Source: Mizuhopecten yessoensis
Taxonomy: Eukaryota
NCBI RefSeq assembly: GCF_002113885.1
Contig: NW_018405538.1
Span: forward strand, 37,362 to 101,361
Direction of reading: 5' to 3'
Length of the DNA: 64,000 nucleotides
Positions 1 through 22,161 of this stretch are shown in pieces. The stretch's first letter is position 1. The number at the start of each line of letters is the position of its first letter. Under the pieces are notes generated by a model. The model made no database searches and was not told where the DNA came from. It was given only the letters and a program-made list of their open reading frames with translations. Both the position numbers and the translations under genes were made by a program.

Positions 1-687
1 TGTTCTGGATTGTGGTTGGTTGGTCTGGATTGTGGTTGGTTGGTCTGGATTGTGGTTGGTTGTTCTGGATTGTGGTTGGTTGGTCTGGATTGTGGTTTGT
101 TGTTCTGGATTGTGGTTGGTTGGTATTCCGTAGACTTGTACGCAAGGGTTCTGGATTGTGGTTTGTTGTTCTGGATTGTGGTTGGTTGGTATTCCGTAGA
201 CTTGTACGCAAGGGTTCTGGATTGTGGTTGGTTGGTCTGGGTTGTGGTTGGTTGGTTTGGATTGTGGTTGGTTGTTCTGGATTGTGGTTGGTTGTTCTGG
301 ATTGTGGTTGGTTGGTATTCCGTGGACTTGTACGCAAGGGTTCTGGATTGTGGTTGGTTGGTCTGGATTGTGGTTGGTTGGTTTGGATTGTGGTTGGTTG
401 TTCTGGATTGTGATTTGTTGTTCTGGATTGTTGTTGGTTGTTCTGGATTGTGGTTGGTTGTTCTGGAATGTGGTTGGTTGGTATTCCGTGGACTTGTACG
501 CAAGGGTTCTGGATTGTGGTTGGTTTGTATTTCGTGGACTTGTACGCAAGGGTTCTGGTTTGTGTTTGGTTGGTATTCCGTGGACTTGTGCGCAAGGGTT
601 CTGGATTGTGGTTGGATGGTATTCCGTGGACTTGTACGCAAGGGTTCTGGATTGTGGTTGTTGGTATTCCGTGGACTTGTACGCAAG
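1..687. repeat. GT-rich minisatellite: 20-nt unit (tgttctggattgtggttggt) mixed with a ~46-nt unit containing tggtattccgtggacttgtacgcaaggg; runs off the window start
   Basis: Units read directly; the overlapping ORFs at 10-745 are translated repeat. Confidence 0.95.
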
Positions 688-1419
688 CGTTTGTGATAGT
701 GAAATAATAAATGGATGTATATTAATTAGAGAGGAAATATGTTGATCCTTTGTGTTTGTCTTTAATTTATTTCCTTCTTTAAATATCATTTATTTTGATG
801 GACGATCATGGCCGATCTTTATGTATGCCATCATTTGTCATGCGGTAATGAAATAATATAACAGTTATTTTGATTTGATAATGCCTGCCTCGAAATCCAT
901 AGGACCTCCAACAAAGGTTCTTGCGACTTTGCTTACAATGCATCAGTGTTGTTGTATACGTAGTTATTTATGTATTGAGATATCAGATCACTGTTTACCG
1001 GGAAAATTTGCTGCAGTTTAATTTTCACAATAAGGGCAAATTCGTTGCGACAGTGAATAATAAGTACACAGTTTACCCTATATCATAATTACATGTGAAG
1101 GGCTAAATTTACACTTGGCGAACATGGATTTTACCAGTGTAGGGCAAACATTTCCCAGTTTATATTATTAATTCCTTTTGGAAGTTAATATTCACACCAT
1201 TGAATACAAAATAACTTATCACCACTCTGGTATGAACACATTCACAGATCCTGATAAAAATGTCCCTGGGAATGATCTCTAATACCACACAATCTATATA
1301 TATATCTCCTTACAAGATATAACTTTGGCAGCATGCCTCTTATTTTTTCAAGGAGATCAGCTAAAACATGCTTAATGGGTTTGTATTAGGAACAATATTG
1401 AACAAAAATTAGATTCTCA

Positions 1420-1770
1420 TGTTTGACTTTTGACCTTTGACCTTGATATGACCTTGGCAGTAGCGTCAAACAAAAATGTATAACTTTTGAAAGTATGGCC
1501 AATGCATACTCAACATACAATAACTACCATCTATTAATGGGAAGAATGACTATAACATAAGTTACACCCATTTCTGCACCCCTACCCCCAGAATCTGTAA
1601 TTCCATTCTATATAACAGTATACATAACAAAGTGGCCACCATTTTATTTGATCAATTTCTGTTTTTTCTTTTGAAAGGACAATACACAATAAAGAGTGGT
1701 TTGGGGAAAAAACGATACTTTTTCTGTTATTTGACCTTTGACCTTGATTTTACCTTTGGGTGGCGGTCAA
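1420..1770. repeat. Degenerate interspersed repeat with tgacctttgaccttga motifs
   Basis: Motif at ~1431 and ~1732; related tgaccttga/aaggtca motifs at 54875-55230; family and boundaries not resolved. Confidence 0.35.
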
Positions 1771-2319
1771 ACTGTAAACTTTATATACCAAAATTTTAAG
1801 TGATGCATACATGATCTATATATACCATCTAAGTATGCATGTGATGATGATGAGAAATGATATAGCACTTTCTGGACCCCTACCCCCCTTTATTCAAAAT
1901 CACATTTTTTTTTGCCAAGGTAAGGTTATATATGACCCCACAAAAATCCCCAGTGGATTTCCCAGAGGGGTGGCCAGCTGAAATATGTTCTAGAAGGTCC
2001 ATACTTATGAAAAAATGAGGCCACCCTTTGACAGCAGGGGGGTGCTCACTTAACCCCTCTGGCCCCGGGGCCCCAGGGGCTAAGGGCCCTTTTTGAAGGT
2101 AAGTGAACACCCCCTTGCTCTATACAGCTTACTTCAACTCAAATTGAAGCTTAAGGTTACAAAAACAAACTAAATCGCCGTGGCTTGTCTATACTATTAT
2201 CTCACGATATTAAGAACATAGGTTTATTGCATCAGCTGTACCATACACATACTGTAGGTTAGTATGATGTAGTGTTACTTGTTTTAAAGACATACCCATT
2301 TCGAGTTTTTTTTCTTCAG

Positions 2320-2394
2320 ATTTAATCAAGATAAAGACTGTTTATTGCGGCATATTTTGTATAATCATCATGACTGGAGCCACCCCTAGTCACG
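2320..2394 (+). CDS. IFI27: Upstream exon of ISG12/IFI27-like gene (LIKIKTVYCGIFCIIIMTGATPSH); start either at ATG 2370 or in an unseen upstream exon
   Basis: Acceptor ttttttttcttcag (AG 2318-2319) and donor CACG|gtgagt (GT 2395); frame open; phase-1 end joins 13967 in frame (G+CT = Ala). Confidence 0.75.
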
Positions 2395-5300
2395 GTGAGT
2401 ATGCTAAGTGTCACCCTTAGTCACGGTGAGTGTGATAAGTGTCACCCTTAGTCACGGTGAGTGTGATAAGTGTCACCCCTAGTCACGGTGAGTGTGATAA
2501 GTGTCATCCCTAGTCACGATGAGTATAATAAACGAGTGAGTGTGGTAAGTGTCACCCTAGTCATGGTGAGTGTGACAAGTGTCACCCGTGTCATGGTTAG
2601 TTATAGTCAAGGTGAGGATGATAAATCACCCCTAGTCAAGGTGAGTATGATAAATGTCACCCCTAGTCACGGTGAGTGTGATAAGTGTCATCCTAGTAAC
2701 GGTGAGTGTGATAAATGTCATTCCTAGTCACGGGAAGTGTGATATGGTTCAACCCTAGTCATGGTTAGTTAGTGTAATAAGTGTCACCCCTAATAATGGT
2801 GAGTGTGATATGGGTCAACCCTAGTCATGGTTAGTTAGTGTGATAAATGTCACCCCTAGTCATGATTAGTTAGTGTGATAAATGTCACCCATAGTCATGG
2901 TTAGTTAGTGTGATATGTGTCACCCCTAGTAACGGTGAGTGTGATATGGGTCACCCCTAGTCACGGTGAGTGTGATATGGGTCAACCCTTGTCATGTTGA
3001 GTGTGATATGGGTCACCCCTAGTCATGGTGAGTGTGATATGGGTCAACCCTTGTCATGGTTAGTTAGTGTGATAAGTGTCACCCCTAGTAACGGTGAGTG
3101 TGATATGGGTCACCCATTGTCATGTTGAGTGTGATATGGGTCACCCCTAGTCATGGTGAGTGTGATATGGGTCAACCCTAGTCATGATTAGTTAGTGTGA
3201 TAAGTGTCACCCCTAGTCACGGTGAGTGTGATAAGTGTCACCCCTAGTCATGTTGAGTGTGATATGGGTCACCCCTGGTCATGGTGAGTGTGATATGGGT
3301 CAACCCTTGTCATGGTGAGTGTGATATGGGTCAACCCTTGTCATGGTTAGTTAGTGTGATAAGTGTCACCCCTAGTCATGGTGAGTGTGATTAGAGTCAC
3401 CCCTAGTCACGGTGAGTGTGATATGGGTCAACCCTTGTCATGGTTAGTTAGTGTGATAAATGTAATCCCTAGTCATGGTTAGTTAGTGTGATAAGTGTCA
3501 CCCCTAGTCATGGTGAGTGTGATTAGAGTCAACCCTAGTCACGGTGAGTGTGTTATGGGTCAACCCTTATCATGGTGAGTGTGATAAGTGTCATTATAGT
3601 CACGGTGAGTGTGATATGGGTCAACCCTAGTCATGGTTAGTAAGTGTGATAACCGTCACTCCTAGTCATGGTGAGTGTGTTTAGAGTCACCCCGAGTTAT
3701 GATGATTGAGATATGTGTCACCCCCTAGTCACGGTGAGTGTGATAAGTTTCACCCCTAGTCATGGTGAATGTGATAAGTGTCACCACTAGTTATGATCAG
3801 TGAGATATGTGTCACCCCTAGTCACGGTTAGTGAGATAAGTGTCAACCCTAATCACGGTGTGTGTGATAGGTGTCACCCCTAGTCACGGTGAGTGTAATA
3901 AGTGTCACCCCTAGTCATGGGTAGTGTGGTAAATGTTACCCTTAGTCAGGCTGAGTGTAATATGTGTACCCTTAGTCCTGGTTAGTTAAAGTGATAAGTA
4001 TCACTACTAAGCACGATGAGTGTGATAAATGCCATCCCTAATCACGGTGATTGTGTAAAGTGTCACCCCTAGTCATGGTGAGTGTGATAAGTGTCACCCC
4101 TTGTCACAGTGAGTGAGATAAATTACTCACCTAATAATGGTGATTTTGATAAATGTCACTATAGTCACGGTGAATGTGATAGGTGTCACCCCTAGTCATT
4201 GTGAGTGTGATAGGTGTCACCCATAGTCACGACGAGTGTCATATGTGTACCCCGTAGTCCTGGTGAGTGTGATAAGTGTCACCCCTCGTCACAGTGTGTG
4301 TGATATGGGTCAACTCTAGTCACGGTGAGTGTTATAAGTGTTACCCCTAGTCATGATGAGTGTGATGAGTGTCACCCATAGTCATGGTGTGTGTGATAAG
4401 TGTCACCCCTAGTCATGGTTAGTTAGTGTGATAAGTGATACCCCTAGTCACGGTGAGTGTTATAAGTGTCACCCCTAGTCACGGTGTGTGTGATAAGTGT
4501 CACCCCTTGTCACAGAGTGTGTGATAAGTGTCACCCCTAGTACCGGTGAGTGTTATAAATGTCACCCCTAGTCATGATGAGTGTGATGAGTGTCACCCCT
4601 AGTCATGGTGTGTGTGATAAGTGTCACCCCTAGTCGTGATGTGTGTGATAGGTGTCACCCCTAGTCATGATGTGTGTGATATGGGTCACCCCTATTCATG
4701 GTTAGTTAGTGGGATAAGTTTCACCCCTTGTCACAGTGAGTGTGATATTGGTCAACCCTAGTCACGGAGAGTGTTATAAGTGTTACCCCTAGTCACGGTA
4801 TGTGTGATAAGTGTCACCCCTTGTCACAGTGTGTGCGATAAGTGTCACCCCTAGTACCGGTGAGTGTTATAAGTGTCACCCCTAGTCATGATGAGTGTGA
4901 TAAGTGTCACCCCTAGTCACGGTAAGTGTGATAAACTGTAAGTGCCACCCCCTAGTCACGGTGAGTGTGATAAGTTTCACCCCTTGTCACAGTGAGTGTG
5001 ATATTGGTCAACCCTAGTCACGGTGAGTGTTATAAGTGTTACCCCTAGTCACGGTGAGTGTGATAAGTGTCACCACTAGTTATGATCAGTGAGATAAGTG
5101 TCACCCCTAGTCACGGTTAGTGAGATGAGTGGCAACACTAATCACGGTGTGTGTAATAAATGTCACCCCTAGTCATGGTTAGTGTGATAAATGTTACCCT
5201 GAGTCAGGTTGAGGGTAATATGTGTCCCCTTAGTCCTGGTTAGTTAAAGTGATAAGTATCACTACTAGTCACGATGAGTGTGATAAATGTCACCCCTAGT

Positions 5301-8300
5301 CACGATGAGTGTGATAAATGCCATTCCTAATCACGGTGATTGTGTAAAGTGTCACCCCTAGTCATGGTGGGTGTGATAAGTGTCACCCCTTGTCACAGTG
5401 AGTGAGATAAGTTACTCACCTAATAATGTTGATTTTGATAAATATCACTCTAGTCACGGTAAATGTGATAGGTGTCACCCCTAGTCATTGTGAGTGTGAT
5501 ACGTGTCACTCCTATTCATTGTGAGTGTGATAGGTGTCACCCATAGTCACGATGAGAGTCATATGTGTTCCCCGTAGTCATGGTTAGTTAGTGTGATAAG
5601 TGTCACCCCTAGTAACGGTGAGTGTAATAAGTGTCACCCCTTGTCACAGTGAGGGTGATATTGGTCAAACCTAGTCACGGTGAGTGTGATATGGGTCACC
5701 CCTAGTCATGGTGAGTGTGATATGGGTTAACTCTAGTCACGGTGAGTGTGATAAGGGTCACCCATTGTCACAGTGAGTGTGATATTGGTCAAACCTAGTC
5801 ACGGTGAGTGTGATATGGGTCACCCCTAGTCATGGTGAGTGTGATATGGGTCAACCTTTGTCATGGTTAGCTAGTGTGATAAGTGCCACCCCTAATCATG
5901 GTGAGTATGATAAATGACCCATACTCATGGTGAGTGTGATAAGTTTCATCCCTTGTCACGGTGAGTGTGATATGGGTCAACCCTAGTCATGGTTAGTTAG
6001 TGTGATAAGTGTCACCCCTAGTCATGGTGAGTGTGATATGGGTTAACTCTAGTCACGGTGAGTGTGATAAGGGTCACCCATTGTCACAGTGAGTGTGATA
6101 TTGGTCAAACCTAGTCATGGTTAGTAAGTATGATAAGTGTCACCCCTAGTCATGGTGAGTGTGATAAGTGTCACTGCTAGTCACGTTGATTGTGATAAAT
6201 CTCACCACTAGTCCCGGTGAGTGTGATAAATGTCATCCCTAGTTATGATGAGCGATATATGAATCACCCCTAGTCATGGTGAGTGTGATAAGTGTCACTG
6301 CTAGTCACGTTGATTGTGATAAATATCACCACTAGTCACGGTGAGTGTGATAAATGTCATCCCTAGTTATGATGAGCGATATATGAATCACCCCTAGTCA
6401 CGGTGAGTGTGATAAGTGTCACCCCTAGTCACGGTGAGTGTGATAAGGGTCACCCATTGTCACAGTGAGTGTGATATTGGTCAAACCTAGTCATGGTTAG
6501 TAAGTATGATAAGTGTCACCCCTAGTCATGGTGAGTGTGATAAGTGTCACTGCTAGTCACGTTGATTGTGATAAATTTCACCCCTAGTCACGGTGAGTGT
6601 GATATGGGTCAACCCTAGTCATGGTTAGTTAGTGTGATAAGGGTCACCCATAGCCTTGGTTAGTTAGTGTGATAAGTGTCATCCCCCTATTCATGGTTAG
6701 TTAGTGTGATAAGTGTCACCCCTAGTCACGGTTAGTGTGATAAACTGTAAATGCCACCCCTAGTCACGGTGAGTGTGATAAGTGTCACCCCTAGTCACGG
6801 TTAGTGTGATATGGGTTAACTCTAGTCACGGTGAGTGTGATAAGTTTCACCCCTTGTCACAGTGAGTGTGATATTGGTCAACCCTAGGCATGGTTAGTTA
6901 GTGAGATAAGTGTCACCCCTAATTATGATGAGTGTGATATGAATCACCTCTAGTCACGGTGAGTGTGATAAGTTTCACCCCTTGTCACAGTGAGTGTGAT
7001 ATTGGTCAAACCTAGGCATGGTTAGTTAGTGTGATAAGGGTCACCCCTAGTCATGGTTAGTTAGGGGGATAAGTGTCACCCCTAGTCATGGTGAGTGTGA
7101 TTAGTGTCACCCCTTGTCACAGTGAGTGTGATATTGGTCAAACCTAGGCATGGTTAGTTAGTGTGATAAGGGTCACCCATAGCCTTGGTTAGTTATTGTG
7201 ATAAGTGTCATCCCCCTATTCATGGTTAGTTAGTGTGATAAGTGTCATCCCCCTATTCATGGTTAGTTAGTGTGATAAGTGTCACCCCTAATTATGATGA
7301 GTGTGATATGAATCACCCCTAGTCACGGTGAGTGTGATACATCACCCCTCGTCATTGTGAGTGTGATAAGTGTCACCCCTTCTCATGGTTAGCTAGTGTG
7401 ATAAGTGCCACCCCTAATCATGGTGAGTATGATAAATGACCCCTACTCATGGTGAGTGTGATAAGTGTCATCCCTTGTCACGGTGAGTGTGATAGGGGTC
7501 AACCATAGTCTTGGGTAGTTAGTGTGATAAGTGTCACCCCTAGTCACGGTGAGTGTGATATGGGTTAACTCTAGTCACGGTGAGTGTGATAAGGGTCACC
7601 CATTGTCACAGTAAGTGTGATATTGGTCAAACCTAGTCATGGTTAGTAAGTATGATAAGTGTCACCCCGAGTCATGGTGAGTGTGATATGGGTCAACCCA
7701 AGTCATGGTTAGTTAGTGTGATAAGTGTCACCCCTAGTCATGGTGAGTGTGATAAGGGTCACTGCTAGTCACGTTGATTGTGATTAATGTCGCCCCTAGT
7801 CACGGTGAGTGTGATATGGGTCAACCCTAGTCATGGTTAGTTAGTGTCATAAGGGTCACCGATTGTCACAGTGAGTGTGATATGGGTCAACCCTTGTCAT
7901 GGTTAGTTAGTGTGATAAGTGTCACCCCTAGTCACGGTGAGTGTGATAAATGTCACCCCTAGTTATGATGAGTGATATATGAATCACCCATAGTCACGGT
8001 GAGTGTGATAAGTGTCACCCCTAGTGATGGTGAGTGTGATAAGTGTCAACCCTAGTAACTTTGAGTGTGATATGGATCAACCTTAGTCATGGTTAGTAAG
8101 TGTGATAAGTGTCACCCCTAGTCACTGTGAATGTGATAAGTGTCACCGCTAGTCACGTTGATTGTGATAAATATCACCACTAGTCACGGTGAGTGTGATA
8201 AATGTCACCCCTAGTTATGATGAGTGATATATGAATCACCCCTAGTCACGGTGAGTGTGATAAGTAGTTAGTGTGATAATTGTCACCCCTTGTCACGGTG

Positions 8301-11300
8301 TGCGTGATATTGGTCAACCCTAGGCATGGTTAGTTAGTGCGATAAGTGTCACCCATAGGCACGGTGAGTGTGATAAGGGTCACCCATAGTCACGGTGAGT
8401 GTGATACATCACCCCTCGTCATTGTGAGTGTGATAAGTGTCGCCCCTAGTCACGGTGAATGTAATATGTGTCACCCCTAGTCACTGTGGATGTGATAAGT
8501 GTCACTGCTAGTCACGTCGATTGTAATAAATGTCACCTCTAGTCACGGTGAGTTTGATATGGGTCAACCCTAGTAACGTTGACTGTGATATGGGTCAACC
8601 CTTGTCATGGTTAGTTAGGGTGATAAGTGTCACCACTAGGCACTGTGAATGTGATATTGGTCAAACCTAGTCATGGTTAGTTTGTGATAAGTGTCACCCC
8701 TAGTCACTGTGAATGTGATAAGTATCACTGCTAGTCACGTTGATTGTAATAAATGTCACCCCTAGTCACGGTGAGTGTGATATGGGTCAACCCTAGTAAC
8801 GTTGAGTGTGATATGGGTCAACCTTAGTCATGGTTAGTAAGTGTGATAAGTGTCACCCCTAGTCACTGTGAATGTGATAAGTGTCACTGCTAGCCACGTT
8901 GATTGTGATAAATGTCACCACTAGTAACGGTGAGTGTGATTAGTGTCACCCCTTGTCACAGTGAGTGTGATATTGGTCAAACCTAGGCATGGTTAGTTAG
9001 TGTGATAAGTGTCATGTGAATGTGATAAGTGTCACTGCTAGCCCCGTTGATTGTGATAAATGTCGCCACTAGTCACGGTGAGTGTAATAAGTGTCACCCC
9101 TAGTAACGTTGAGTGTGATATGGGTCAAACTTAGTCATGGTTAGTAAGTAGTCACGGTGAGTGTTATAAGTGTCACCCCTAGTCATTGTGAGTGTGATAA
9201 GTGTCAACCCTAGTCATGGCTAGTTAGTGTGATAAGTGATACCCCTAGTCACGGTGACACTTATCACACATACTAACCATGACTAAGGTTGACCCATATC
9301 ACACACACTGTGACGAGGGGTGACACTTATACACTCACCGTGACTAGTGGCGACATTTATCACAATCAGGTGATTCTTATCTCACTCATCATAATTAGGG
9401 GTGACAATTATCACACTAACTAACCATGACAAGGGTTGACCCATATCAAGCTCGCCGTGATTAGGGGTGACCCTTATCACATTCACCATGACTAGGGGCG
9501 ACACATATCACACCCAACATGACTAAAGGGTGACAATTATCACACTAACTAACCATGACAAGGGTTGACCCATATCAAACTCACCGTGACTAGGGGTGAA
9601 ACTTATCACACTAACTACTGTGACAAGGGGTGATATATCAAACTAACCGTGACTAGGGGTGATATTGGTCAAACCTAGTCATGGTTAGTAGTCATGGTGA
9701 ATGTGATAAGTGTCACCCCTAGTCACGGTGAGTGTTATAAGTGTCACCCCTCGTAATGGTGAATGTGATTATTGTCACCCCTAGTCGTGGTTAGTTAATG
9801 TGATAAGTGTCGCCACTTGTCATGATGTGTGTGATAAGTCACCCCTAGTCATGGTGAGTGTGATAAGTGTCACCCCTTATCACTGTGAATGTGATATTGG
9901 TCAACCCTAGTCCTGGTTAGTGAGTGTGATAAGTGTCCCCCCTAGTAATGGTGAGTGTGATATGTGTAAACCCTAGTCCTGGTTAGTTAGTGTGATAAGT
10001 GTCACCCCTAGTCACAGTGATTTCGATATGGGTCAACCCTAGTCACGATGAGTGTGATAACTGTCACCCCTAGCAATGGTTAGTGTTATAAATCACCCCT
10101 AGTCATTATGAGTGCGATAAGTGTCACCCCTACTCATGGTAAGTTAGTGTGATAAGTGTCACCCCTTATCATGGTGAGTATGATAAATCACCCCTAGTCA
10201 TGGTGAGTGTGATAAGTGTCACCCCTTGTCACAGTGAGTGTGATATGGGTCAACCCTAGTCATGGTTAGTTAGTGTGATAAGTGTCACTCCTAGTCACAG
10301 TGATTTTGATATGGGTCAACTCTAGTCACGGTGAGTGTGATAACTGTCACCCCTAGCCATGGTTAGTGTGATACATCACCCCTTGTCATGGTGAGTGTGA
10401 AAAGTTTCACCCCTAGTCACGGTGAGTGTGATAAGTGTCACCACTAGTTATGATCAGTGAGATAAGTGTCACCCCTAGTCACGGTTAGTGAGATGAGTGT
10501 CAACACTTATCACGGTGTGTGTAATAAGTGTCACCCCTAGTCATGGTTAGTGTGATAAATGTTACCCTGAGTCAGGTTGAGTGTAATATGTGTACCCTTA
10601 GTCCTGGTTAGTTAAAGTGATAAGTATCACTACTAGTCACGATGAGTGTGATAAATGTCACCCCTAGTCACGATGAGTGTGATAAATGCCATCCCTAATC
10701 ACGGTGATTGTGTAAAGTGTCACCCCTAGTCATGGTGAGTGTGATAAGTGTCACCCCTTGTCACAGTGAGTGAGATAAGTTACTCACCTAATAATGGTGA
10801 TTTTGATAAATATCACTCTAGTCACGGTAAATGTGATAGGTGTCACCACTAGTCATTGTGAATGTGATACGTGTCACTCCTATTCATTGTGAGTGTGATA
10901 GGTGTCACACATAGTCACGATGAGTGTCATATGTGTTCCCCCTAGTCATGGTTAGTTAGTGTGATAAGTGTCACCCCTAGTCACGGTGAGTTTGATATGG
11001 GTCAACCCTAGTCATGGTTAGTTAGTGTGATAAGTGTCACCCCTAGTCATGGTGAGTGTGATAAGTGTCACTGCTAGTCACGTTGATTGTGATTAATGTC
11101 ACCCCTAGTCACAGTGAGTTTGATATGGGTCAACCCTAGTCATGGTTAGTTAGCGTGATAAGTGTCACCCCTAATTATGATGAGTGAGATATGAATCACC
11201 CCTAGTCACGGTTAGTTTGATAAATCACCCCTCGTCATGGTGAGTGTGATAAGTGTCACCCCTTCTCATGGTTAGCTAGTGTGAGGTGAGTGTGATATGG

Positions 11301-13943
11301 GTCAACCCTAGTCATGGTTAGTTAGCGTGATAAGTGTCACCCCTAATTATGATGAGTGAGATATGAATCACCCCGAGTCACGGTTAGTTTGATAAATCAC
11401 CCCTCGTCATGGTGAGTGGGATAAGTGTCACCCCTTCTCATGGTTAGCTAGTGTGAGGTGAGTGTGATATGGGTCAACCCTAGTCATGGTTAGTTAGTGT
11501 GATAAGTGTCACCCCTTGTCACAATGAGTGTGATATGGGTCAACCCTTGTCATGGTTAGTTAGTGTGATAAGTGTCACCCATAGTAACGGTGAGTCTGAT
11601 ATGTGTCACCCCTAGTCATGGTTAGTTAGTGTGATAAGTGTCACCCCTAATAACGGTGAGTGTGATATGGGTCAACTCTAGTCACGGTGAGTGTGACAAG
11701 TGTCACTCATTGTCACAGTGAGTGTGATATTGGTCAAACCTAGTCATGGTTAGTAAGTATGATAAGTGTCACCCCTAGTCATAGTGAGTGTGATATGGGT
11801 CACCACTAGTCATGGATAGTTAGTGTGATAAATGTCACCCCTAGTCACGATGAGTGTGATATGGGTCAACCCTAGTCATGGTTAGTTAGTGTGATAAGGG
11901 TCACCCATAGCCTTGGTTAGTTAGTGTGATAATTGTCACCCCTTGTCATTGTGAGTGTGATAAGTGTCACTGCTAGACACGTTGATTGCGATAAATGTCA
12001 CCACTAATCACGGTGAGTGTGATATGGGTCAACCCTAGTCATGGTTAGTTAGTGTGATAAGTGTCAACCCTAGTTTTGAAGAGTGTCAACGCTTATCACG
12101 GTGTGTGAAATAAGTGTCACCCCTTGTCACGAGGAGTGTAATAAGTGTCACCCCTAATCATGGTGAGTGTGATAAATTTCACCCCTAGTCACGGTGAGTG
12201 TGATAAGAGTCATCCCCTCCCCCTAGTCACGGTGAGTGTGATAAGTGTCACCCCTAGTTATGGTGAGTGAGATGAGTGACTTCCCTAATAATGGTGAGTG
12301 TGACAAATGTCACTCTAGTCACGATGAATGTGATAGGTGTCATCCCTAGTCATTGTGAGTGTGATAGGTGCCACCCCTAGTCACGGTGAGTGTGATAAGT
12401 GTCATCCCTAGTCATGGTGAGTGTGATTAGTGTCACCCCTTGTCACAATGAGTGTGATATGGGTCAACCCTTGTCACAATGAGTGTGATATGGTTCAACC
12501 ATAGTCATGGTTAGTTAGTGTGATAAGTGTCACCCCTAGTTATGATGAGTGTGATATGGGTCACCCCTAGTCATGGTTAGTTAGTGTGATAAGTGTCACC
12601 CCTTGTCACAATGAGTGTGATATGGGTCACCCCTTGTCACAATGAGTGTGATATGGGTCAACCCTAGTCATGGTAAGTTAGTGTGATAAGTGTCACCCAT
12701 AGTAACGGTGAGTCTGATAAGTGTCACCCCTAGTCATGGTGAGTGGGATAAGTGTCAACCCTAGTAACTTTGAGTGTGATATGGATCAACCTTAGTCATG
12801 GTTAGTAAGTGTGATAAGTGTCACCCCTAGTCACTGTGAATGTGATAAGTGTCACTGCTAGTCACGTTGATTGTGATAAATGTCACCACTAGTCACGGTG
12901 AGATTGATATGGGTCAACCCTAGTCATGGTTTGTTAGTGTGATAAGTGTCACCCCTAGTAATGATGAGTGATATATGAATCACCCCTAGTCACGGTGAGT
13001 GTGATAAGTGTCACCCATAGTCACGGTGAGTGTGATAAGCGTCACCCCTAATTATGATGAGTGAGATATATGTCACCCCTAGTCGAGGTGAGTGTGATAA
13101 ATGTCACCCCTACATTTGATGAATGAGATATGTGTCACCCCTTGACACGTTGAGAGTGATACATTTCACCCTAATCAAGGTGAGTGTGATAAGTGTCACC
13201 CCTAGTTATGATGAGTGAGATATGTGTCACACCTAGTTACGGTTAGTGAGATAAGTGTCAACCCTTATCACGGTGTGTGAAATAAGTATCACCCCTTGTC
13301 ACGAGGAGTGTAATAAGTGTCACCCCTAATCATGGTGAGTGTGATAAATGTCACCCTTAGTCACGGTGAGTGTGATAAGAGTCCCCCCTCCCCCCCCCCC
13401 CCCCCCCCCACACTAATCATGGTGAGTGTGATAAGTGTCACCACTAGTTATGGTGAGTGAGATGAGTGACTCCCCTAATAATGGTGAGTGTGACAAATGT
13501 CACTCTTGTCACGGTGAGTGTGATAGGTGTCATCCCTAGTCATTGTGAGTGTGATAGGTGTCACCCCTAGTCACGGTGAGTTTGATAAGTGTCACCCCTA
13601 GTCATGGTGAGTGTGATAAATGTCACCCCTAGTCACGATGAGTGTAATAAGTGTCACCCCTAGTTATGGTGAGTGAGATGAGTGACTCCCCTAGTCATGG
13701 TGAGTGTGATAAGTGTCATCCCTTGTCATGGTGAGTACGATAAGTGTCACCCCTAGTCACGGTGAATGTGATAAGTGTCACCCCTAGTCATGGTGAGTGT
13801 GATAAGTGTCATCCCTTGTCACGTTGAGTGTGATAAGTGTCACCCCTAGCCACGGTGAGTGTGATAAATATCATCCCTAGTCACAGTGAGTTGGATAAAT
13901 GTCATCCTAGTAACGGTGAGTGAGATTAGTGTCACCCCTAGTT
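2381..13943. repeat. Intronic satellite A: 31-nt unit cacccctagtcacggtgagtgtgataagtgt with 35-nt ggttagttag variants; about 350 units by length/period
   Basis: Direct tandem periodicity; fills essentially the whole 2395-13966 intron; internal inverted block ~9254-9662. Confidence 0.97.
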
Positions 13944-13966
13944 ACAGCTATCTTAATCTGTTTTAG

Positions 13967-14265
13967 CTTGGAGCTTGGGTGACGTCTTTGTAATTGGGAT
14001 TGGGGTTGCAGGAGGCATTGTGGCTGTTCCTTTTGTAGTATCCGCAGGACTAGGAGTCTTGGGCTTCTCTACCGCCGGGACAGCAGCGGGATCTATTGGA
14101 GCCGCCTTTATGTCGTCCTATGGTGGCAGCATCGCCGCGGGCAGCGCCGTCTCAGTGATGCAGTCAGCCGGGGCCGCCGGAGTAGGAGTTGCTATTAAGG
14201 CTCTAGGGGGTGTGGCAGGGGGTGCAGCCACGTACGCTGCGAGGAAAAAATACAATGACAACTAA
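13967..14265 (+). CDS. IFI27: Terminal coding exon of ISG12/IFI27 (interferon alpha-inducible protein 27)-like small Gly/Ala-rich membrane protein
   Basis: Acceptor ctgttttag (AG 13965-13966); translation contains ISG12-like motif LGFSTAGTAAGSIGAAFMS..GG.IAAGSAVSVMQSAGAAG; stop TAA 14263-14265; AATAAA at 14558. Confidence 0.88.
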
Positions 14266-15586
14266 ACTTCTGACGCATCAGTCAATCTATTTACATAAAA
14301 CTTAAATACATGTACTTAGAACTGCTTGTCAATTTGCAGAAAGTGTCTGTTGTAAAGTTTTCTGTGCTAAATTATGTGTATCAAAGTTCGAAAAAAAAAT
14401 ATTCTGCTCAAAATATTTGTTTTATTCATATTTACTGTAAAACCAAACTATTTTCGAGTACTTTCTCTTTCGCTTTGAATCTATCTAGATTGTTCTAGGG
14501 ACAATATCTGTCGATGTCACCATATCAACCCCACGGAAGTAGGTCATACAGTGGATAAATAAAATTGGATATATCTATTTTGTTGGTTCCATAGCAACCA
14601 CGAAAATACCAAAAATGTTTTTATTCAACAATCATGTAATTTTATACAGTACCTTGTATCGGTTTCAGGTATTTTTTCTACGAAGTTTTCACTTAAGTTG
14701 TAATTTCCACCAAACCTGCACACGATATATCACACTCAGACAGTCTGTTACTAAGCGTAACCTTAGATATAAGCAATTTTATTGGCAATAACAGAATTCG
14801 TTATCAAGTATTTTGATCTTATGACTTTATAATACGACGTCACAGTAGATTGTTAAGAGCTATATGACGTCAAATGCAAATCTGCGAGAACGTTCTCATT
14901 CTAATAAAGTAAAACGAAATGTAATGGGCTACGATAAAAATCTGAAATTCGTAACAATTGTTTATAGTTATTATCTTATTTTGAAAACTAACCAGTCGGT
15001 AACTTCGGCATCTATTGTAAATTTAATTTGAAAATGATAAAAAATACCGTTTCTCGCTGTGGATTCTCTGTAGCAGATCTGCCGATATCACTTTATTACT
15101 TTACCTATATGTAAGTGTAGCTGTAAGAATTGATTTGAACAGTTGACAACAAAATATACGAAAAAGAAAAATTAATTCTGCAATTTTTTTCTTGAAAACT
15201 GATGAAATATGTGATATTCGTTTTGTAACCATTGTCTTCATCTAGGACAGCCGTTTGTCAAACAATTACTACAAAAATCAAGGAAGCGCCAATTTAAAAT
15301 AACGTTGATGATACAGAAAGCCTCACTACTTAATAACAATACTGTACTATATGGCCATTTTGCCCAATATTGACTAATCACTGGTACGAAAAGTCATGGA
15401 CATATGTAGAATACACCGAAAAGGGAAAGGTACCAATACAAACCTTTCAAAACTGATGATTTGTATTGAAGATACCTTATAACGTTACAAACTGTGGACT
15501 ACAATAGAATGTACACCGAGTACTTCTTCTAAACCATGACAGAGTTATATTTAGCTTCAGAGTTATGGCCAACCTCAGAGACTAGT

Positions 15587-18500
15587 AACAACAATGTACA
15601 CCAATGAGCATGATATAAAACATCGACCTTCTCAGCATAAACAACGCAATAACAAGGTTCACCAATGAGTGTAATATAAAACATTTACCTTCTCAGCATA
15701 AACAACGCAAAAACAAGGGCACCAATGAGCATGATATAAAACATTGACCTTCTCAGCATAAACAACGCAAAAACAAGGTCACCAATGAGCATGATATAAA
15801 ACATTGACCTTCTCAGCATAAACAACGCAATAACAAGGTTCACCAATGAGTGTAATATAAAACATTGCCCTTCTCAGCATAAACAACGCAAAAACAAGGG
15901 CACCAATGAGTGTAATATAAAACATTGACCTTCTCAGAATAAACAACGCAACAACAAGGTTCACCAATGATCATAATATAAAACATTGACATTCTCAGCA
16001 TAAACAATGCAACAACAAGGTACACTAATGAGTGTAATATAAAAGATCAACCTTATCAGCATAAACAACGCAACAACAAGATACACCATTGATCATAATA
16101 TAAAACATTGACCTTCTTAGCATAAACAACGCAACAACAAGATACACCAATGATCATAATATGAAACATCGACCTTCTCAGCATAAACAACGCAACAACA
16201 ATTTACACCAATGAGCATCATATAAAACATCGACCTTCTCAGCATAAACAACGCAATAACAAGGTTCACCAATGAGTGTAATATAAAACATCGACCTTCA
16301 CAGCATAAACAAAGCAATAACAAGGTTAACCAATGAGAATAATATAAAACATTGACCTTCTCAGCATAAACAACGCAGCGACAACGTACACCAATGAGCA
16401 TCATACAAAACATTAACCTTCTTAGCATAAACAACGCAACAACAAGATACACCAATGAGTGTAATATAAAACATAGACCTTCACAGCATAAACAACGCAA
16501 CAACAAGATACACCAATGAGCATCATATAAAACATTGACCTTCTCAGCATAAACAACGCAGCGACAACGTACACCAATGAGCATGATATAAAACATTGAC
16601 CTTCTTAGCATAAACAACGCAACAACAAGATACACCAATGAGTGTAATATAAAACATCGACCTTCACAGCATAAACAACGCAATAACAAGGTTAACAAAT
16701 GAGAATAATATAAAACATTGACATTCTCAGCATAAACAACGCAACAACAACGTACACCAATGAGCATCATACAAAACATTAACCTTCTCAGCATAAACAA
16801 CGCAACAACAAGATACACCAATGAGTGTAATATAAAACATTGACCTTCTCAGCATAAACAACGCAACAACAAGATACACCAATGAGTGTAATATAAAACA
16901 TCGACCTTCACAGCATAAACAACGCAATAACAAGGTTCACCAATGAGAATAATATAAAACATCGACCTTCTCAGCATAAACAACGCAACAACAAGGTTCA
17001 CCAATGATCATAATATAAAACATTGACATTCTCAGCATAAACAACGCAACAACAAGGTACACCAATGAGCATCATACAAAACATCCACCTTCTCAGCATA
17101 AACAACGCAACAACAAGATACACCAATGAGCATCATATAAAACATTGACCTTCTCAGCATAAACAACGCAACAACAAGGTTCACCAATGAGCATCATACA
17201 AAACATCGACCTTCTCAGTATAAACAACGCAACAACAAGATACACCAATGAGCATGATATAAAACATCAACATTCTCAGCATAAACAACGCAACAACAAG
17301 GTTCACAAATGAGCAAAATATAAAACATCGACCTTCTCAGCATAAACAACGCAATAACAAGGTTCACAAATGAGCAAAATATAAAGCATCGACCTTCTCA
17401 GCATAAACAACGCAACAACAAGATAAACCAATGATCATAATATAAAACATTGACCTTGTCAGCATAAACAACGCAACAACAAGGTTCACAAATGAGCAAA
17501 ATATAAAACATCGACCTTTTCAGCATAAACAACGCAATAACAAGGTTCACAAATGAGCAAAATATAAAACATCGACCTTTTCAGCATAAACAACGCAATA
17601 ACAAGGTTCACGAATGAGCAAAATATAAAACATCGACCTTCTTAGCATAAACAACGCAACAACAAGGTACACCAATGAGCATCATACAAAACATCAACCT
17701 TCTCAGCATAAACAACGCAACAACAAGGTTCACCAATGAGCATCATACAAAACATCGCCCTTCTCAGTATAAACAACGCAACAACAAGATACACCAATGA
17801 GCATCATATAAAACATTGACCTTCTCAGCATAAACAACGCAAAAACAAGGTCACCAATGAGCATGATATAAAACATTGACCTTCTCAGCATAAACAACGC
17901 AAAAACAAGGTCACCAATGAGCATGATATAAAACATTGACCTTCTTAGCATAAACAACGCAACAACAAGGTACACCAATGAGCATCATACAAAACATCGT
18001 AATGAGTGTAATATAAAAGATCAACCTTATCAGCATAAACAACGCAACAACAAGGTTCACCAATGATCATAATATAGTGTAATATAAAACATCGACCTTC
18101 ACAGCATAAACAACGCAATAACAAGGTTCACCAATGAGAATAATATAAAACATCGACCTTCTTAGCATAAACAACGCAACAACAAGGTTCACAAATGAGC
18201 ATAATATAAACGACCTTCACAGCATAAACAACGCAATAACAAGGTTCACCAATGAGAATAATATAAAACATCGACCTTCTTAGCATAAACAACGCAACAA
18301 CAAGATACACCAATGATCATAATATGAAACATCGACCTTCTCAGCATAAACAACGCAATAACAAGGTTCACCAATGAGAATAATATAAAACATCGACCTT
18401 CTTAGCATAAACAACGCAACAACAAGGTACACCAATGAGCATCATACAAAACATCAACCTTCTCAGCATAAACAACGCAACAACAAGATACACCAATGAG

Positions 18501-21500
18501 CATCATATAAAACATTGACCTTCTCAGCATAAACAACGCAAAAACTAGGTCACCAATGAGCATGATATAAAACATTGACCTTCTCAGCATAAACAACGCA
18601 ATAACAAGGTTCACGAATGAGCAAAATATAAAACATCGACCTTCTCAGCATAAACAACGCAACAACGAGGTTCACCAATGAGCATCATACAAAACATCGA
18701 CCTTCTCAGCACAAACAACGCAACAACAAGGTTCACAAATGAGCATAATATAAACGACCTTCACAGCATAAACAACGCAATAACAAGGTTCACCAATGAG
18801 AATGATATAAAACATCGACCTTCTCAGCATAAACAACGCAACAACAAGATAAACCAATGATCATAATATAAAACATTGACCTTCTCAGCATAAACAACGC
18901 AACAACAAGGTTCACAAATGAGCATAATATAAAAGATCAACCTTATCAGCATAAACAACGCAACAACAAGGTTCACAAATGAGCAAAATATAAAACATCG
19001 ACCTTCTCAGCATAAACAACGTAACAACAAGGTTCACAAATGATCATAATATAAAACATTGACCTTATCAGCATAAACAACGCAACAACAAGGTACACCA
19101 ATGAGTGTAATATAAAAGATCAACCTTATCAGCATAAACAACGCAACAACAAGATACACCATTGATCATAATATAAAACATTGACCCTCTTAGCATAAAC
19201 AACGCAACAACAAGATACACCAATGATCATAATATAAAACATCAACATTCTCAGCATAAACAGCGCAACAACAAGATACACCAATGAGCATAACATAAAA
19301 CATCGACCTTCCCAGCATAAACAACGCAACAACAAGATACACCAATGAGCATAATATAAAACAGTGACCTTCTCAGCATAAACAATGCAACAACAATATA
19401 CACCAATGAGCATAATATAAAACATCGACCATCTCAGCATAAATAACGCAACGACAAGGTTCACCATTGAGCATAATATAAAACAGTGACCTTCTCAGCA
19501 TAAACAACGCAACAACAATATACACCAATGAGCATAATATAAAACATCGACCTTCTCAGCATAAATAACGCAACAACAAGGTTCACCATTGAGCATAATA
19601 TAAAACATTGACCTTCTTAGCATCAATAACGCAACAACAAGGTTCACCAATGAGCATAATATAAAACATCGACCTTCTCAGCATAAATAACGCAACAACA
19701 AGATACACCAATGATCATGATATAAAACATCTACCTTCTTAGCATAAACAACGCAACAACAATATACACCAATGAGTGTAATATAAAACATTGACCTTCT
19801 CAGCATAAACAACGCAACAACAATATACACCAATGAGTGTAATATAAAACATAGACCTTCTCAGCATAAACAACGCAACAACAAGATACACCAATGAGCA
19901 TAATATAAAACATCGACCTTCTCAACATAAACAATGCAACAACAAGGTTCACCAATGAGCATAATATAAAACATCGACCTTCTCAGCATAAATAACGCAA
20001 CAACAAGGTTCACCAGTGATCATAATATAAAACATCGACCTTCTCAGCATAAATAACGTATCAACAAGATACACCAATGATCATGATATAAAACATCAAC
20101 CTTCTTAGCATAAACAACGCAACAACAATATACACCCATGAGTGTAATATAAAACATTGACCTTCTCAGCATAAACAACGCAACAACAATATACACCAAT
20201 GAGTGTAATATAAAACATAGACCTTCTCAGCATAAACAACGCAACAACAAGGTTCACAAATGAGCAAAATATAAAACATCGACCTTCTCAGCATAAACAA
20301 TGCAAGAACAAGGTTCACCAATGAGCATAATATAAAACATCGACCTTCTCAGCATAAATAACGCAACAACAAGGTTCACCATTGAGCATAATATAAAACA
20401 TTGACCTTCTTAGCATCAATAACGCAACAACAAGGTTCACCAATGAGCACAATATAAAACATCGACCTTCTCAGCATAAATAACGCAACAACAAGGTTCA
20501 CCATTGAGCATAATATAAAACATTGACCTTCTTAGCATCAATAACGCAACAACAAGGTTCACCAATGAGCACAATATAAAACATCGACCTTCTCAGCATA
20601 AATAACGCAACAACAAGGTTCACCATTGAGCATAATATAAAACATTGACCTTCTTAGCATCAATAACGCAACAACAAGGTTCACCAATGAGCACAATATA
20701 AAACATCGACCTTCTCAGCATAAATAACGCAACAACAAGATACACCACTGATCATGATATAAAACATCTACCTTCTTAGCATAAACAACGCAACAACAAT
20801 ATACACCCATGAGTGTAATATAAAACATTGACCTTCTCAGCATAAACAACGCAACAACAAGGTTCACAAATGAGCAAAATATAAAACATCGACCTTCTCA
20901 GCATAAACAATGCAAGAACAAGGTTCACCAATGAGCATAATATAAAACATCGACCTTCTCAGCATAAATAACGCAACAACAAGGTTCACCAGTGATCATA
21001 ATATAAAACATCGACCTTCTCAGCATAAACAATGCAACAAAAACAACGCAACAACAAGATACACCAATGAGTGTAATATAAAACATCGACCTTCACAGCA
21101 TAAACAACGCAATAACAAGGTTCACCAATGAGAATAATATAAAACATTGACCTTCTCAGCATAAACAACGCAACAACAAGGTTCACAAATGAGCAAAATA
21201 TAAAACATCGACCTTCTCAGCATAAACAATGCAACAAAAACAACGCAACAACAAGATACACCAATGAGCATAATATAAAACATCGACCTTCTTAGCATAA
21301 ACAACTCAACAACAAGGTTCACCAATGAGCATAATATAAAACATCGACCTTCTTAGCATAAACAACGCAACAACAAGGTTCACCAATGATCATAATATAA
21401 AACATCGACCTTCTCAGCATAAATAACGCAACAACAAGGTTCACCAATGATCATAATATAAAACATCGACCTTCTCAGCATAAACAATGCAACAACAAGG

Positions 21501-21724
21501 TTCACCAATGATCATAATATAAAATATCGACCTTCTCAGCATAAACAACGCAACAACAAGATACACCAATGAGCATTATATAAAACATCGACCTTCATAG
21601 CATAAACAACGCAACAACAATGTTCACCAATGAGCATAATATGAAAAATTGACCTTCTCAGCATAAACAACTCAACAACAAGGTTCACCAATTAGCATAA
21701 TATAAAACATCGACCTCCTTAGCA
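15587..21724. repeat. Satellite B: 61-nt unit caccaatgagcataatataaaacatcgaccttctcagcataaacaacgcaacaacaaggtt, ~100 copies
   Basis: Direct tandem periodicity; minus-strand ORFs here are translated repeat. Confidence 0.97.
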
Positions 21725-22161
21725 CAAAATAACAGTTTACAATGAGGTCATCATAGCGATCATGAATTATATGAATAAAATGAAAAGACATGACTTTCTT
21801 GGACATATTTCTATATATTAAACATAAAAAAACTGCTCAATCAAGAACAGTTTTACACTATGAAGATACGCTTTAAGATATAAATCTGTGTATTATATAT
21901 GTGATTAACGGATGCAACTTGAAAGTTCTCACGATTTTGATTCTCTGTAAGGTGACGTATGTAGTGATATTGTGTCAACGCTTGCTAAACACTATGGGTA
22001 AAATAATCCTAGTAAAAATCAGACTGTCAGCAGAACCATATATCCAACTCAAAATCGATAAACTTTAGAAAATTTAAATAGAGACTCTTGAAAAAGTACT
22101 AGGAGAATAATACCAGGTGTTCTGAAAGGGTAAGCGTTGTAGCGTGCCAATGTGTGAAAAC

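What the first reader, a model, noticed from the sequence alone, without database searches (positions are those of the whole stretch)
2381..13966. An 11.5-kb intron made almost entirely of copies of its own 5' splice site
Seen: the exon ends ...GCCACCCCTAGTCACG|gtgagtatgctaagtgt, and the satellite unit cacccctagtcacg|gtgagtgtgataagtgt is the last 14 exon nt plus the first 17 intron nt. It repeats until ~23 nt before the acceptor at 13966. A large share of the ~350 units carry G|GTGAGT or G|GTTAGT. Reading past the true donor meets TAG at 2418-2420, so any decoy donor gives a premature stop. Each unit also has a TCACC..GGTGA inverted motif overlapping the GT. Inference: hundreds of potential U1 snRNP sites in an ISG12-family gene could act as a U1 sink, suppress premature polyadenylation, delay induction or couple expression to NMD.
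Basis: partly seen in the sequence, partly recalled or inferred. Interest (0 to 1): 0.85.

Follow-up and report, generated by a model that had tools for sequence, protein, structure and literature searches.

The report
Splice-donor minisatellite filling a scallop intron
An 11.5-kb intron of a scallop IFI27/ISG12-like gene really is about 365 tandem copies of its own exon-intron junction, but this is an extreme example of a known kind of repeat (human 6-16/IFI6 and F7, amphioxus "mirages"), and nothing here shows it has a function.

Summary
Window 2381-13942 is a 31-bp minisatellite of about 365 units. Its unit is the last 14 nt of a signal-peptide exon plus the first 17 nt of the intron, and it fills 99.8% of intron 2395-13966 of an Ifi-6-16 (ISG12) gene of Mizuhopecten yessoensis. 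The database gene model uses exactly the 2394/13967 junction.

The same satellite, in the same register, sits in this intron in at least four other paralogs and in one Pecten maximus homolog (107 units). A second P. maximus copy keeps only about 1.5 units, and an Argopecten copy has a single junction.

The decoy donors are not better conserved than the rest of the unit; the +1 G is the least conserved G. Array length varies more than 20-fold between copies.

A neighbouring synaptobrevin gene has both its donor and its acceptor amplified in the same way. First-stage readers of this scan noted many similar arrays elsewhere in this genome (unchecked notes).

My reading is a near-neutral boundary-spanning ("mirage"-type) minisatellite in which the exon-proximal donor is chosen by position. 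The U1-sink, delay and NMD ideas are neither supported nor excluded. It is a new, extreme member of a known kind.

The parts
2320..2394 (+). Signal-peptide exon, an internal exon with a polypyrimidine-cag acceptor at 2319|2320. Its last 14 nt are the first half of satellite unit 1.
   Evidence: Acceptor, reading frame and donor are conserved in paralogs C3524, C4080 and C51447, in P. maximus and in Argopecten. Transcript-like contig L038 joins a 5' exon, the homologous exon and the ISG12 exon.
2331..2333 (+). ATA at the position where all paralogs and orthologs have the start ATG. The ancestral start codon is lost in this copy.
   Evidence: Alignment, sequences, translation.
2370..2372 (+). 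ATG used by the database gene model (107-aa product beginning MTGATPSHA).
   Evidence: P0001.
2395..13966 (+). Phase-1 intron of 11,572 nt; 99.8% of it is satellite.
   Evidence: The junction G|CT gives Ala. The frame of 13969-14265 matches the ORF list. P0001 reads ...PSHA|WSLGD.
2381..13942 (+). 31-bp minisatellite of about 365 units, consensus CACCCCTAGTCACG|GTGAGTGTGATAAGTGT. It has private sub-variants, including a 35-nt form with an extra TAGT.
2395..2402 (+). Exon-proximal (authentic) donor GTGAGTAT. It has 8 Watson-Crick pairs plus 1 wobble out of 11 positions against the U1 5' end.
   Evidence: Only 20 other GT sites in the array reach 8 or more Watson-Crick pairs.
2418..2420 (+). In-frame TAG met on read-through, upstream of the first decoy donor.
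9256..9665 (-). Block of about 12 units in inverted orientation. It forms 60-136-nt imperfect inverted repeats with the neighbouring forward units.
13943..13966 (+). Unique intron tail with a T-rich tract and the acceptor AG.
13967..14265 (+). Last coding exon: the ISG12/Ifi-6-16 domain and the stop codon TAA at 14263-14265.
   Evidence: Pfam PF06140, E 3e-13. ORF. dN/dS 0.10-0.25 against homologs.

Best explanation
This is a boundary-spanning ('mirage'-type) minisatellite. A 31-bp piece covering the junction between the signal-peptide exon and the intron of an ancestral pectinid ISG12-like gene was duplicated in tandem. It has since expanded, contracted, diverged and locally re-amplified inside the intron, presumably by slippage and unequal exchange (inferred). 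The array was inherited or exchanged among paralogs, and this copy has grown to about 365 units. The pre-mRNA therefore carries about 270 GT-bearing copies of the donor, about 200 of them matching G|GT(G/T/A)AGT exactly. I infer that splicing uses the first, exon-proximal donor. The likely reason is position: the 75-nt exon is defined between its strong acceptor and the nearest downstream donor, the 5'-to-3' rule shown experimentally for the human F7 intron-7 minisatellite. A slightly longer U1 match (+7A, +8T) may help in this copy. Any use of a decoy would give a transcript with a premature stop. The array itself is most likely a tolerated by-product of a repeat-generating process that is very active in scallop genomes, not a device selected for ISG12 regulation. 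What is shown: the anatomy, the origin from the junction, the sharing across paralogs and species, and the lack of donor-specific conservation. What is inferred: first-donor use in vivo, silence of the decoys, and neutrality.
For: The array and its anatomy are.

Origin from the junction. The P. maximus homolog L035 has the junction ...CCTAGTCGTG|GTAAGTGTGAAAAGTGT essentially once. Argopecten has a single junction and a 111-nt intron.

Same satellite in the same register elsewhere. P. maximus L037 has 107.5 copies at 90% matches; the 17-nt intron part of its consensus is identical to the window's and the whole unit matches at 27 of 31 positions. Paralogs C3524, C4080 (three arrays), C2211 upstream and C77432 carry it too.

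The satellite is private to these loci. A whole-genome search for a 30-nt stretch of the unit consensus gave 113 hits against 0 for the control. All 100 listed hits lie on ISG12 contigs or small contigs; 13 further hits were not listed.

No sign of selection on the donors. The +1 G matches the consensus in 75% of units against a mean of 85%, and it lies below the array mean in 7 of 8 arrays.

Dispensability. Arrays range from about 1.5 to 370 units in homologs with intact reading frames.

Generality. The neighbouring synaptobrevin gene has a 33-bp x 6 donor array and a 41-bp x 8 acceptor array around one intron. Pfam positions 5-40 and 41-67 confirm that the outermost, exon-proximal sites are the real ones. 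P. maximus L035 has a 54-bp x 6 acceptor array. The scan holds 69 notes in this genome that fit the words minisatellite, acceptor and donor; these are unchecked.

Junction use. The gene models P0001 and P0002 use the first donor. Transcript-like contig L038 shows the homologous exon-exon join.

Known precedent and mechanism are described in PMC1557585, PMC3087553 and PMC3902484.
Against: There are no transcript data for this gene, so first-donor use and decoy silence are not shown; P0001 is a predicted model. The array has persisted since before the Pecten/Mizuhopecten split and in several paralogs, which could also reflect selection. A donor minisatellite at what I recall to be the same gene position in human IFI6 could point to a family-specific advantage. 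The identity of unit consensus between the two species is uninformative, because a majority consensus of independently decaying units recovers the ancestor. The slight excess loss of +1 G could mean weak selection against decoys, in which case the decoys are not fully neutral.
Confidence: 0.65

Rival explanations
1. The donor array is a selected cis-regulatory device. Hundreds of U1 snRNP sites on the nascent RNA would suppress premature cleavage and polyadenylation, retain or delay the transcript, lengthen induction time, or couple output to NMD through occasional decoy use.
For: About 200 consensus-level donors are spread evenly along the array, 11-25 per kb. The array is retained in several paralogs and in P. 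maximus. Every decoy would give a premature stop. Human 6-16/IFI6, of the same Pfam family, has a donor minisatellite whose proximal repeats are used (PMC1557585, PMC4526556).
Against: Donor positions are not better conserved than the other positions of the unit; +1 G is the least conserved G. Array size varies more than 20-fold, collapses to about 1.5 units in an intact P. maximus gene, and the array is absent in Argopecten. Only 4 AATAAA and no ATTAAA lie in the intron to be suppressed. An inverted block is tolerated. The same architecture occurs at an unrelated housekeeping gene next door.
Confidence: 0.12
2. This copy is a decaying or re-purposed paralog, and the exceptional size and divergence of its array reflect relaxed constraint rather than anything about splicing.
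For: The ancestral start ATG is ATA here (2331-2333), so the model starts 13 codons later and lacks the hydrophobic core of the signal peptide. The protein has lost the WCW motif and the C-terminal GGNCDPK motif shared by the other copies. Among the arrays of more than 20 units this one is the longest and has the lowest mean identity, 0.85 against 0.88-0.94. No transcript-derived protein for it was found in the protein collection.
Against: The exon-2 reading frame is intact, with dN/dS 0.10-0.25 against all homologs. An upstream exon could supply a start codon in the same frame, as in the Argopecten X1 model. Paralog C3524 keeps the ATG and still has an array that spans about 10.5 kb on the scaffold.
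Confidence: 0.15
3. The main biological consequence of the shared intronic satellite is recombination between paralogs, which shuffles signal-peptide exons and ISG12-domain exons.
For: The window's upstream region plus exon 1 is 84% identical to C3524 over 262 nt. Its exon 2 has saturated synonymous divergence from every copy, dS 1.3-2.4, which is more than the Mizuhopecten-Pecten comparisons at about 0.9-1.45. Within each species the exon ends and the unit consensus match: CCCC in Mizuhopecten and GTCC in Pecten.
Against: dS from 98 Gly/Ala-rich codons is noisy. No breakpoint was mapped. This reading is compatible with the neutral explanation and does not replace it.
Confidence: 0.06
4. The feature is an artefact: either 2320-2394 is not an exon, or the 11.5-kb array is an assembly error.
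For: The assembly is fragmented (82,659 contigs), and the paralog arrays contain N gaps.
Against: The window's array has no N. It has position-specific variants and higher-order structure. The chromosome-scale P. maximus record (55 Mb) has a 3.3-kb array of the same satellite. The exon is conserved with its acceptor, frame and donor across copies and species.
Confidence: 0.02

Closest known systems
Human interferon-inducible 6-16 (IFI6/G1P3) minisatellite at the exon 2 / intron 2 boundary (Turri et al. 1995, as described in PMC1557585 and PMC4526556)
   Same: It belongs to the same protein family (Pfam Ifi-6-16). It is a tandem array whose first unit spans an exon-intron boundary, so the donor is reiterated in the intron. 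From memory, not checked here, it follows the signal-peptide exon as in the scallop.
   Different: The human array has about 26 units, the authentic donor plus 25 pseudo-sites (PMC1557585); from memory, the unit is 12 nt. The two proximal pseudo-sites are used constitutively and give protein isoforms. The scallop array has a 31-nt unit, out of frame and carrying a stop, in about 365 copies that fill the whole intron. The unit sequences are unrelated, so any link would be convergence or coincidence.
Human F7 intron 7 37-bp VNTR, and the CBS, LMNB2 and PDGFA boundary minisatellites (PMC1557585)
   Same: The first monomer contains the exon-intron junction and identical pseudo-donors follow. In F7 only the most upstream donor is used, by an oriented 5'-to-3' mechanism, which is the mechanism I infer here.
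   Different: These arrays have 5-20 units against about 365. The human arrays are polymorphic within a species, whereas this one is also shared across species and paralogs. Splicing behaviour here is untested.
[quoted passage not shown]
   Same: Both donor-side and acceptor-side junctions are amplified, in several unrelated genes of one genome. They do not appear to disturb normal splicing, and they show concerted evolution and length instability. The scallop window shows donor-side and acceptor-side arrays in neighbouring genes.
   Different: Mirages are described for cephalochordates with few copies (for example 3-6) and units of 10-160 bp. I found no description for molluscs in the held library. 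The copy number here is about two orders of magnitude higher.

Membership tests
Boundary-spanning ('mirage'-type) minisatellite | A head-to-tail tandem array of a minisatellite-sized unit | tested here: met
   Period 31, 364 copies; 370 units by wrap-around alignment.
Boundary-spanning ('mirage'-type) minisatellite | The terminal unit spans a genuine exon-intron boundary, so the splice site is reiterated | tested here: met
   Unit 1 is exon 2381-2394 plus intron 2395-2411. The exon is validated by paralog and ortholog conservation, by gene models and by a spliced contig.
Boundary-spanning ('mirage'-type) minisatellite | The unit derives from the local junction and is not imported | tested here: met
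   A single-copy homologous junction exists in P. maximus L035 and in Argopecten. The satellite was found only at these loci in the genome.
Boundary-spanning ('mirage'-type) minisatellite | The exon-proximal site is the one used and the reiterated sites are mostly silent | not testable with these tools
   Only the predicted models P0001 and P0002 use the first donor. No RNA data exist for this locus.
Boundary-spanning ('mirage'-type) minisatellite | Length instability or copy-number variation | tested here: inconclusive
   Copy number differs greatly among paralogs and species, from 1.5 to 370 units. Allelic variation was not testable.
ISG12 / IFI6 / IFI27 (Pfam PF06140 Ifi-6-16) | A domain match above the curated cut-off | tested here: met
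   49.9 bits against a cut-off of 29.1, E 3e-13, profile positions 4-83 of 84.
ISG12 / IFI6 / IFI27 (Pfam PF06140 Ifi-6-16) | Induction by interferon-like or antiviral signalling | not tested
   No expression data were available. The name 'interferon alpha-inducible protein 27-like' is an annotation by similarity.
Recursive splice sites (ratchet points) | A juxtaposed acceptor and donor (YAG|GTRAGT) that regenerates a donor after each splicing step | tested here: not met
   In the unit, CTAG ends 5 nt before the GT (CTAG-TCACG-GT), so each step would add 5 nt (unit consensus).
Transposon-borne satellite | Copies dispersed at unrelated loci or flanked by transposon features | tested here: not met
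   113 genome-wide hits, all listed ones on ISG12-paralog contigs or small satellite-only contigs.
Known structured RNA in the intron | A match to an Rfam family at its gathering score | tested here: not met
   No match in window 1-16000.

The most novel reading that the evidence does not exclude
Donor-site minisatellites placed directly after the signal-peptide exon would be a recurrently selected feature of ISG12/IFI6 genes, arising independently in scallops and in humans. The array would work as a U1-recruiting platform that tunes output or timing of an immune-effector transcript, and it would also promote exchange of 5' exons among paralogs. A broader version is that pectinid genomes have a genome-wide process that seeds minisatellites at splice junctions, so far described only in amphioxus.
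Probability: 0.1. Interest if true: 0.8.

Novelty: new member of a known kind. Interest (0 to 1): 0.42.

Why it matters
With about 270 GT-bearing copies of one donor in front of a single acceptor, this is a far larger natural case than the known ones with 5-26 pseudo-sites. It could test how a spliceosome picks one donor among near-identical competitors: positional scanning or exon definition against proximity to the acceptor. The array has survived speciation and gene duplication. The exon end and the repeat unit share species-specific bases, which suggests that repeat turnover can reach coding sequence. Taken with the neighbouring gene and the scan's other notes, it suggests that junction-seeded 'mirage' repeats, known from amphioxus, are common in scallops. 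That matters for gene annotation, because decoy sites can mislead predictors, and for ideas on how introns grow and how new intron positions arise.

Tried and rejected
Transposon or imported satellite: rejected, because all listed genome-wide hits are at ISG12 paralog loci or on small satellite-only contigs.

Recursive splicing: rejected on unit geometry, because the CTAG lies 5 nt upstream of the GT.

Known RNA family in or near the intron: none found.

Selection keeping the donors intact: not seen in any of 8 arrays.

Cryptic poly(A) signals as a reason for U1 protection: only 4 AATAAA and 0 ATTAAA.

RNA structure: the array folds better than shuffles. This follows from the GTGA/TCAC motifs in the unit, and I saw nothing specific to the authentic donor.

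Cross-species identity of the unit consensus as evidence of constraint: rejected, because a majority consensus of independently decaying units recovers the ancestral sequence.

Transcript evidence for this locus: none. The protein search found only the genome-derived model for this species.

Papers not held: Turri 1995, Canestro 2002 and Cheriyath 2011. Their content is cited only through papers that describe them.

A fuzzy-regex unit scan timed out and was replaced by Hamming and wrap-around alignment. One pattern was too long for the tool and one translation frame was wrong; both were corrected.

Exon 2 was searched by reference, and the join was read from the returned database protein. N gaps in paralog contigs were left as they are.
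Full report
**What is there**

The window is G000:C2211:37362-101361 of a 988-Mb assembly in 82,659 contigs. The only same-species protein returned for the exon is named by NCBI 'interferon alpha-inducible protein 27-like protein 1 [Mizuhopecten yessoensis]'. It sits on a contig of 191,151 bases, which is the length of C2211. I therefore take the organism to be the Yesso scallop.

Tandem Repeats Finder reports a single array at 2381-13942, with period 31, 364.3 copies and 71% matches. A wrap-around alignment to the consensus CACCCCTAGTCACG|GTGAGTGTGATAAGTGT parses 370 units with a mean per-position identity of 0.85. Sixty-one units carry a 4-nt insertion, the GGTTAGTTAGT form. A block at about 9256-9665 is inverted. 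The array contains no N.

**The gene**

- Exon 13967-14265 matches Pfam Ifi-6-16 at E 3e-13, 49.9 bits against a cut-off of 29.1.
- The exon upstream of the array ends ...CCCCTAGTCACG at 2394, followed by GTGAGT. The intron is phase 1, with G|CT read as Ala.
I did not build or search the joined product myself. Exon 2 was searched by reference and the join was read from the returned protein.
- The intron is 11,572 nt, and 11,548 nt of it (99.8%) is satellite.
- Read-through from ATG 2370 stops at TAG 2418-2420, before the first decoy at 2426.

**Is 2320-2394 a real exon?**

Yes, on comparative grounds. Paralogs on C3524, C4080 and C51447 conserve the polypyrimidine-cag acceptor, an open frame and the donor. 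So do two Pecten maximus genes and an Argopecten irradians gene. In all of these the exon encodes a signal-peptide-like N-terminus, for example MKTVHCAIFYLVIMAGFTPSQ in C3524 and MRSAHCSILFLILLAGVCPSR in P. maximus.

A Logan contig from run SRR19746226 (L038) looks like a spliced transcript of a relative. It joins a 5' exon to the homologous signal-peptide exon and then to the ISG12 exon, with no intervening sequence.

In the window's copy the ancestral ATG is ATA (2331-2333). The model therefore starts at an internal ATG and lacks the hydrophobic core of the signal peptide. The frame stays open back to 2289, so an upstream exon could still supply a start codon.

**Origin and age of the satellite**

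- P. maximus gene P0003 (L035) has the junction ...CCTAGTCGTG|GTAAGTGTGAAAAGTGT followed by about half a further unit. That is essentially the single-copy state.
- Argopecten has one junction and a 111-nt intron.
- P. maximus gene P0002 (L037) has the same satellite: period 31, 107.5 copies, 90% matches. Its first unit spans the same exon-intron boundary. Its consensus is identical to the window's over the 17 intronic nt and matches at 27 of 31 positions overall.
- By my reading, both arrays also end at the same within-unit position.

A common origin before the Pecten/Mizuhopecten split is the simplest reading.

Within M. yessoensis the satellite fills the same intron of at least four more paralog copies:

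| Copy | Extent of the array |
|---|---|
| C3524 | Spans 1469-11954, with N gaps |
| C4080 | 14499-16157 (complete, about 54 units); also 22063-22640 and 14-463 |
| C2211 upstream | 15-5421, with gaps |
| C77432 | Present |

A whole-genome search for a 30-nt stretch of the unit consensus gave 113 hits against 0 for the reversed control. All 100 listed hits are on these contigs or on small satellite-only contigs; 13 further hits were not listed. The satellite therefore appears private to this gene family, is derived from its own junction, and is not transposon-borne.

**Are the decoys maintained?**

The array holds 125 GGTGAGT, 70 GGTTAGT and 4 GGTAAGT. GT is intact at +1/+2 in 274 of 370 units, and the sites are spread evenly along the array.

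The donor is not better conserved than the rest of the unit. In the window +1 G is 75%, the lowest of the nine G positions, against a mean of 85%. It lies below the array mean in 7 of 8 arrays, P. maximus included. The C at -2 is 49.5% C and 45% T, as expected for CpG decay.

Array size runs from about 1.5 units (P. maximus P0003, reading frame intact) through 19-116 units to 370. The window's array has private variants, GGTTAGTTAGTGTGAT 31 times and ATATGGGTCAA 34 times, that occur in no other array. This shows local re-amplification.

Only 4 AATAAA and no ATTAAA occur in the array. None of this points to selection for a U1 platform. The identity of the consensus between species is not evidence of constraint either, because a majority consensus of independently decaying units recovers the ancestral unit.

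**How the right donor is probably chosen (inferred)**

The authentic donor ACG|GTGAGTAT pairs with the conserved U1 5' end at 8 Watson-Crick positions plus 1 wobble out of 11. Only 20 other GT sites in the array reach 8 Watson-Crick pairs. This advantage is not general:

- In P. maximus P0002 the first decoy is identical to the authentic site from -7 to +15, by my reading.
- In C3524 the first site is the weaker AAG|GTTAGT.

Position is therefore the likely determinant. For the human F7 intron 7 VNTR, fifty constructs showed that pseudo-sites are functional but that the most upstream one is selected by an oriented 5'-to-3' process, with a contribution from exon definition (PMC1557585). The 75-nt scallop exon, with its strong acceptor, fits that model.

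In each case I could check in these scallops, the exon-proximal copy is the one consistent with the protein. These are the first donor in P0001 and P0002, the last acceptor in P0003, and the first donor and last acceptor in the neighbouring synaptobrevin gene.

**It is not specific to ISG12**

In the same window a synaptobrevin/VAMP gene has a 33-bp x 6 array made of an exon end plus GTAAGT (47183-47380). It also has a 41-bp x 8 array made of an acceptor plus an exon start (47720-48050). Both surround one intron. Pfam Synaptobrevin positions 5-40 end at 47201 and positions 41-67 start at 48025, which confirms the outermost sites as the real ones.

A 10-kb satellite also starts at the first intron base after another exon of that gene. 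P. maximus P0003 has a 54-bp x 6 array of its acceptor plus the exon start.

The scan's index holds 69 first-reader notes in this genome that fit the words minisatellite, acceptor and donor. They name genes such as MPPE1, POMGNT1, HMBS, PSMG2 and SPTLC1. These notes are unchecked, and I use them only as a lead. By my sum of the rows, roughly 39 of the window's 64 kb is minisatellite.

**Comparison with what is known**

Minisatellites whose first monomer spans an exon-intron boundary are an established class. The human examples are 6-16/IFI6, CBS, LMNB2, PDGFA and F7 (PMC1557585). In human 6-16 the authentic donor is followed by 25 pseudo-sites, and the two proximal ones are used.

In amphioxus the same thing, on both donor and acceptor sides, is called a 'mirage' and is thought to be general in that lineage (PMC3087553; PMC3902484). 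I found no description for molluscs in the held library.

It is notable that the classic human case is in the same protein family. From memory, not checked, it also follows the signal-peptide exon. Given how common these arrays seem to be in scallops, I treat this as probable coincidence.

**Side observations on history**

Exon 2 of the window's copy is under purifying selection, with dN/dS 0.10-0.25. It is very old, with dS 1.3-2.4 to every other copy, more than the Mizuhopecten-Pecten comparisons. Yet its upstream region plus exon 1 is 84% identical to C3524, and its array has the Mizuhopecten-type consensus.

Exon ends and unit consensus also share species-specific bases: CCCC in Mizuhopecten and GTCC in Pecten. 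This suggests exchange of the 5' part among paralogs, possibly through the shared arrays, and homogenisation that reaches the coding end of the exon. Both are inferences from small samples.

**Verdict**

The structural interpretation is right. The functional interpretation is unsupported, and a generic, near-neutral origin is more likely (0.65). I put a selected regulatory role at about 0.1. This is a new and extreme member of a known kind.

Noticed in passing
window 47183-47380 and 47720-48050: One 823-nt intron of a synaptobrevin/VAMP gene has its donor amplified (33 bp x 6, in frame) and its acceptor amplified (41 bp x 8). Pfam Synaptobrevin positions 5-40 and 41-67 show that the first donor (47201|47202) and the last acceptor (48024|48025) are the real sites.
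   Followed up: yes
window 36379-46810: A satellite of about 10 kb with 33/61-bp units, interrupted by an N gap at 41114-41894. It begins at the first intron base after an exon ending ...GATGGGCAG|GTAGGATTAAG, and its longer unit repeats the start of the intron without the GT.
   Followed up: partly
window 2331-2333: The start codon conserved in all paralogs and in Pecten and Argopecten (ATG) is ATA in this copy. The annotated protein therefore starts 13 codons later and lacks the signal-peptide core.
   Followed up: partly
window 2135-2394 against 13967-14265: The history looks mosaic. The 5' flank plus exon 1 is 84% identical to paralog C3524, while exon 2 is saturated at synonymous sites against every copy (dS 1.3-2.4). 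This suggests exchange of the 5' half between paralogs, perhaps within the shared satellite.
   Followed up: partly
L035 10179-10505 (Pecten maximus): The homologous intron of a P. maximus paralog has lost the donor array (about 1.5 units remain). It carries a different 54-bp x 6 minisatellite made of its acceptor plus the first 14 nt of the next exon.
   Followed up: yes
window 9256-9665: About 12 satellite units are inverted inside the array. They create 60-136-nt imperfect inverted repeats, one pair only 9 nt apart, that could form long hairpins in the pre-mRNA.
   Followed up: partly
L038 (Logan SRR19746226, 950 nt): An intron-less contig from an unidentified relative joins a 5' exon, the signal-peptide exon and the ISG12 exon. 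It is transcript-like evidence for the family's three-exon structure. The gene caller's 96-aa product starts at an internal codon.
   Followed up: partly
window 25233-27822 (- strand): Long ORFs of 442, 241 and 219 aa look like a non-LTR retrotransposon (reverse transcriptase and endonuclease). I judged this from the translations only and ran no family search.
   Followed up: no
window 1-691, 15587-21728, 33639-35378, 48292-54321, 59622-61981: There are further large minisatellites with periods 20, 61, 21, 41-42 and 32. Summing the rows, roughly 60% of the window is tandem repeat. I did not examine whether any of these derive from splice junctions.
   Followed up: no
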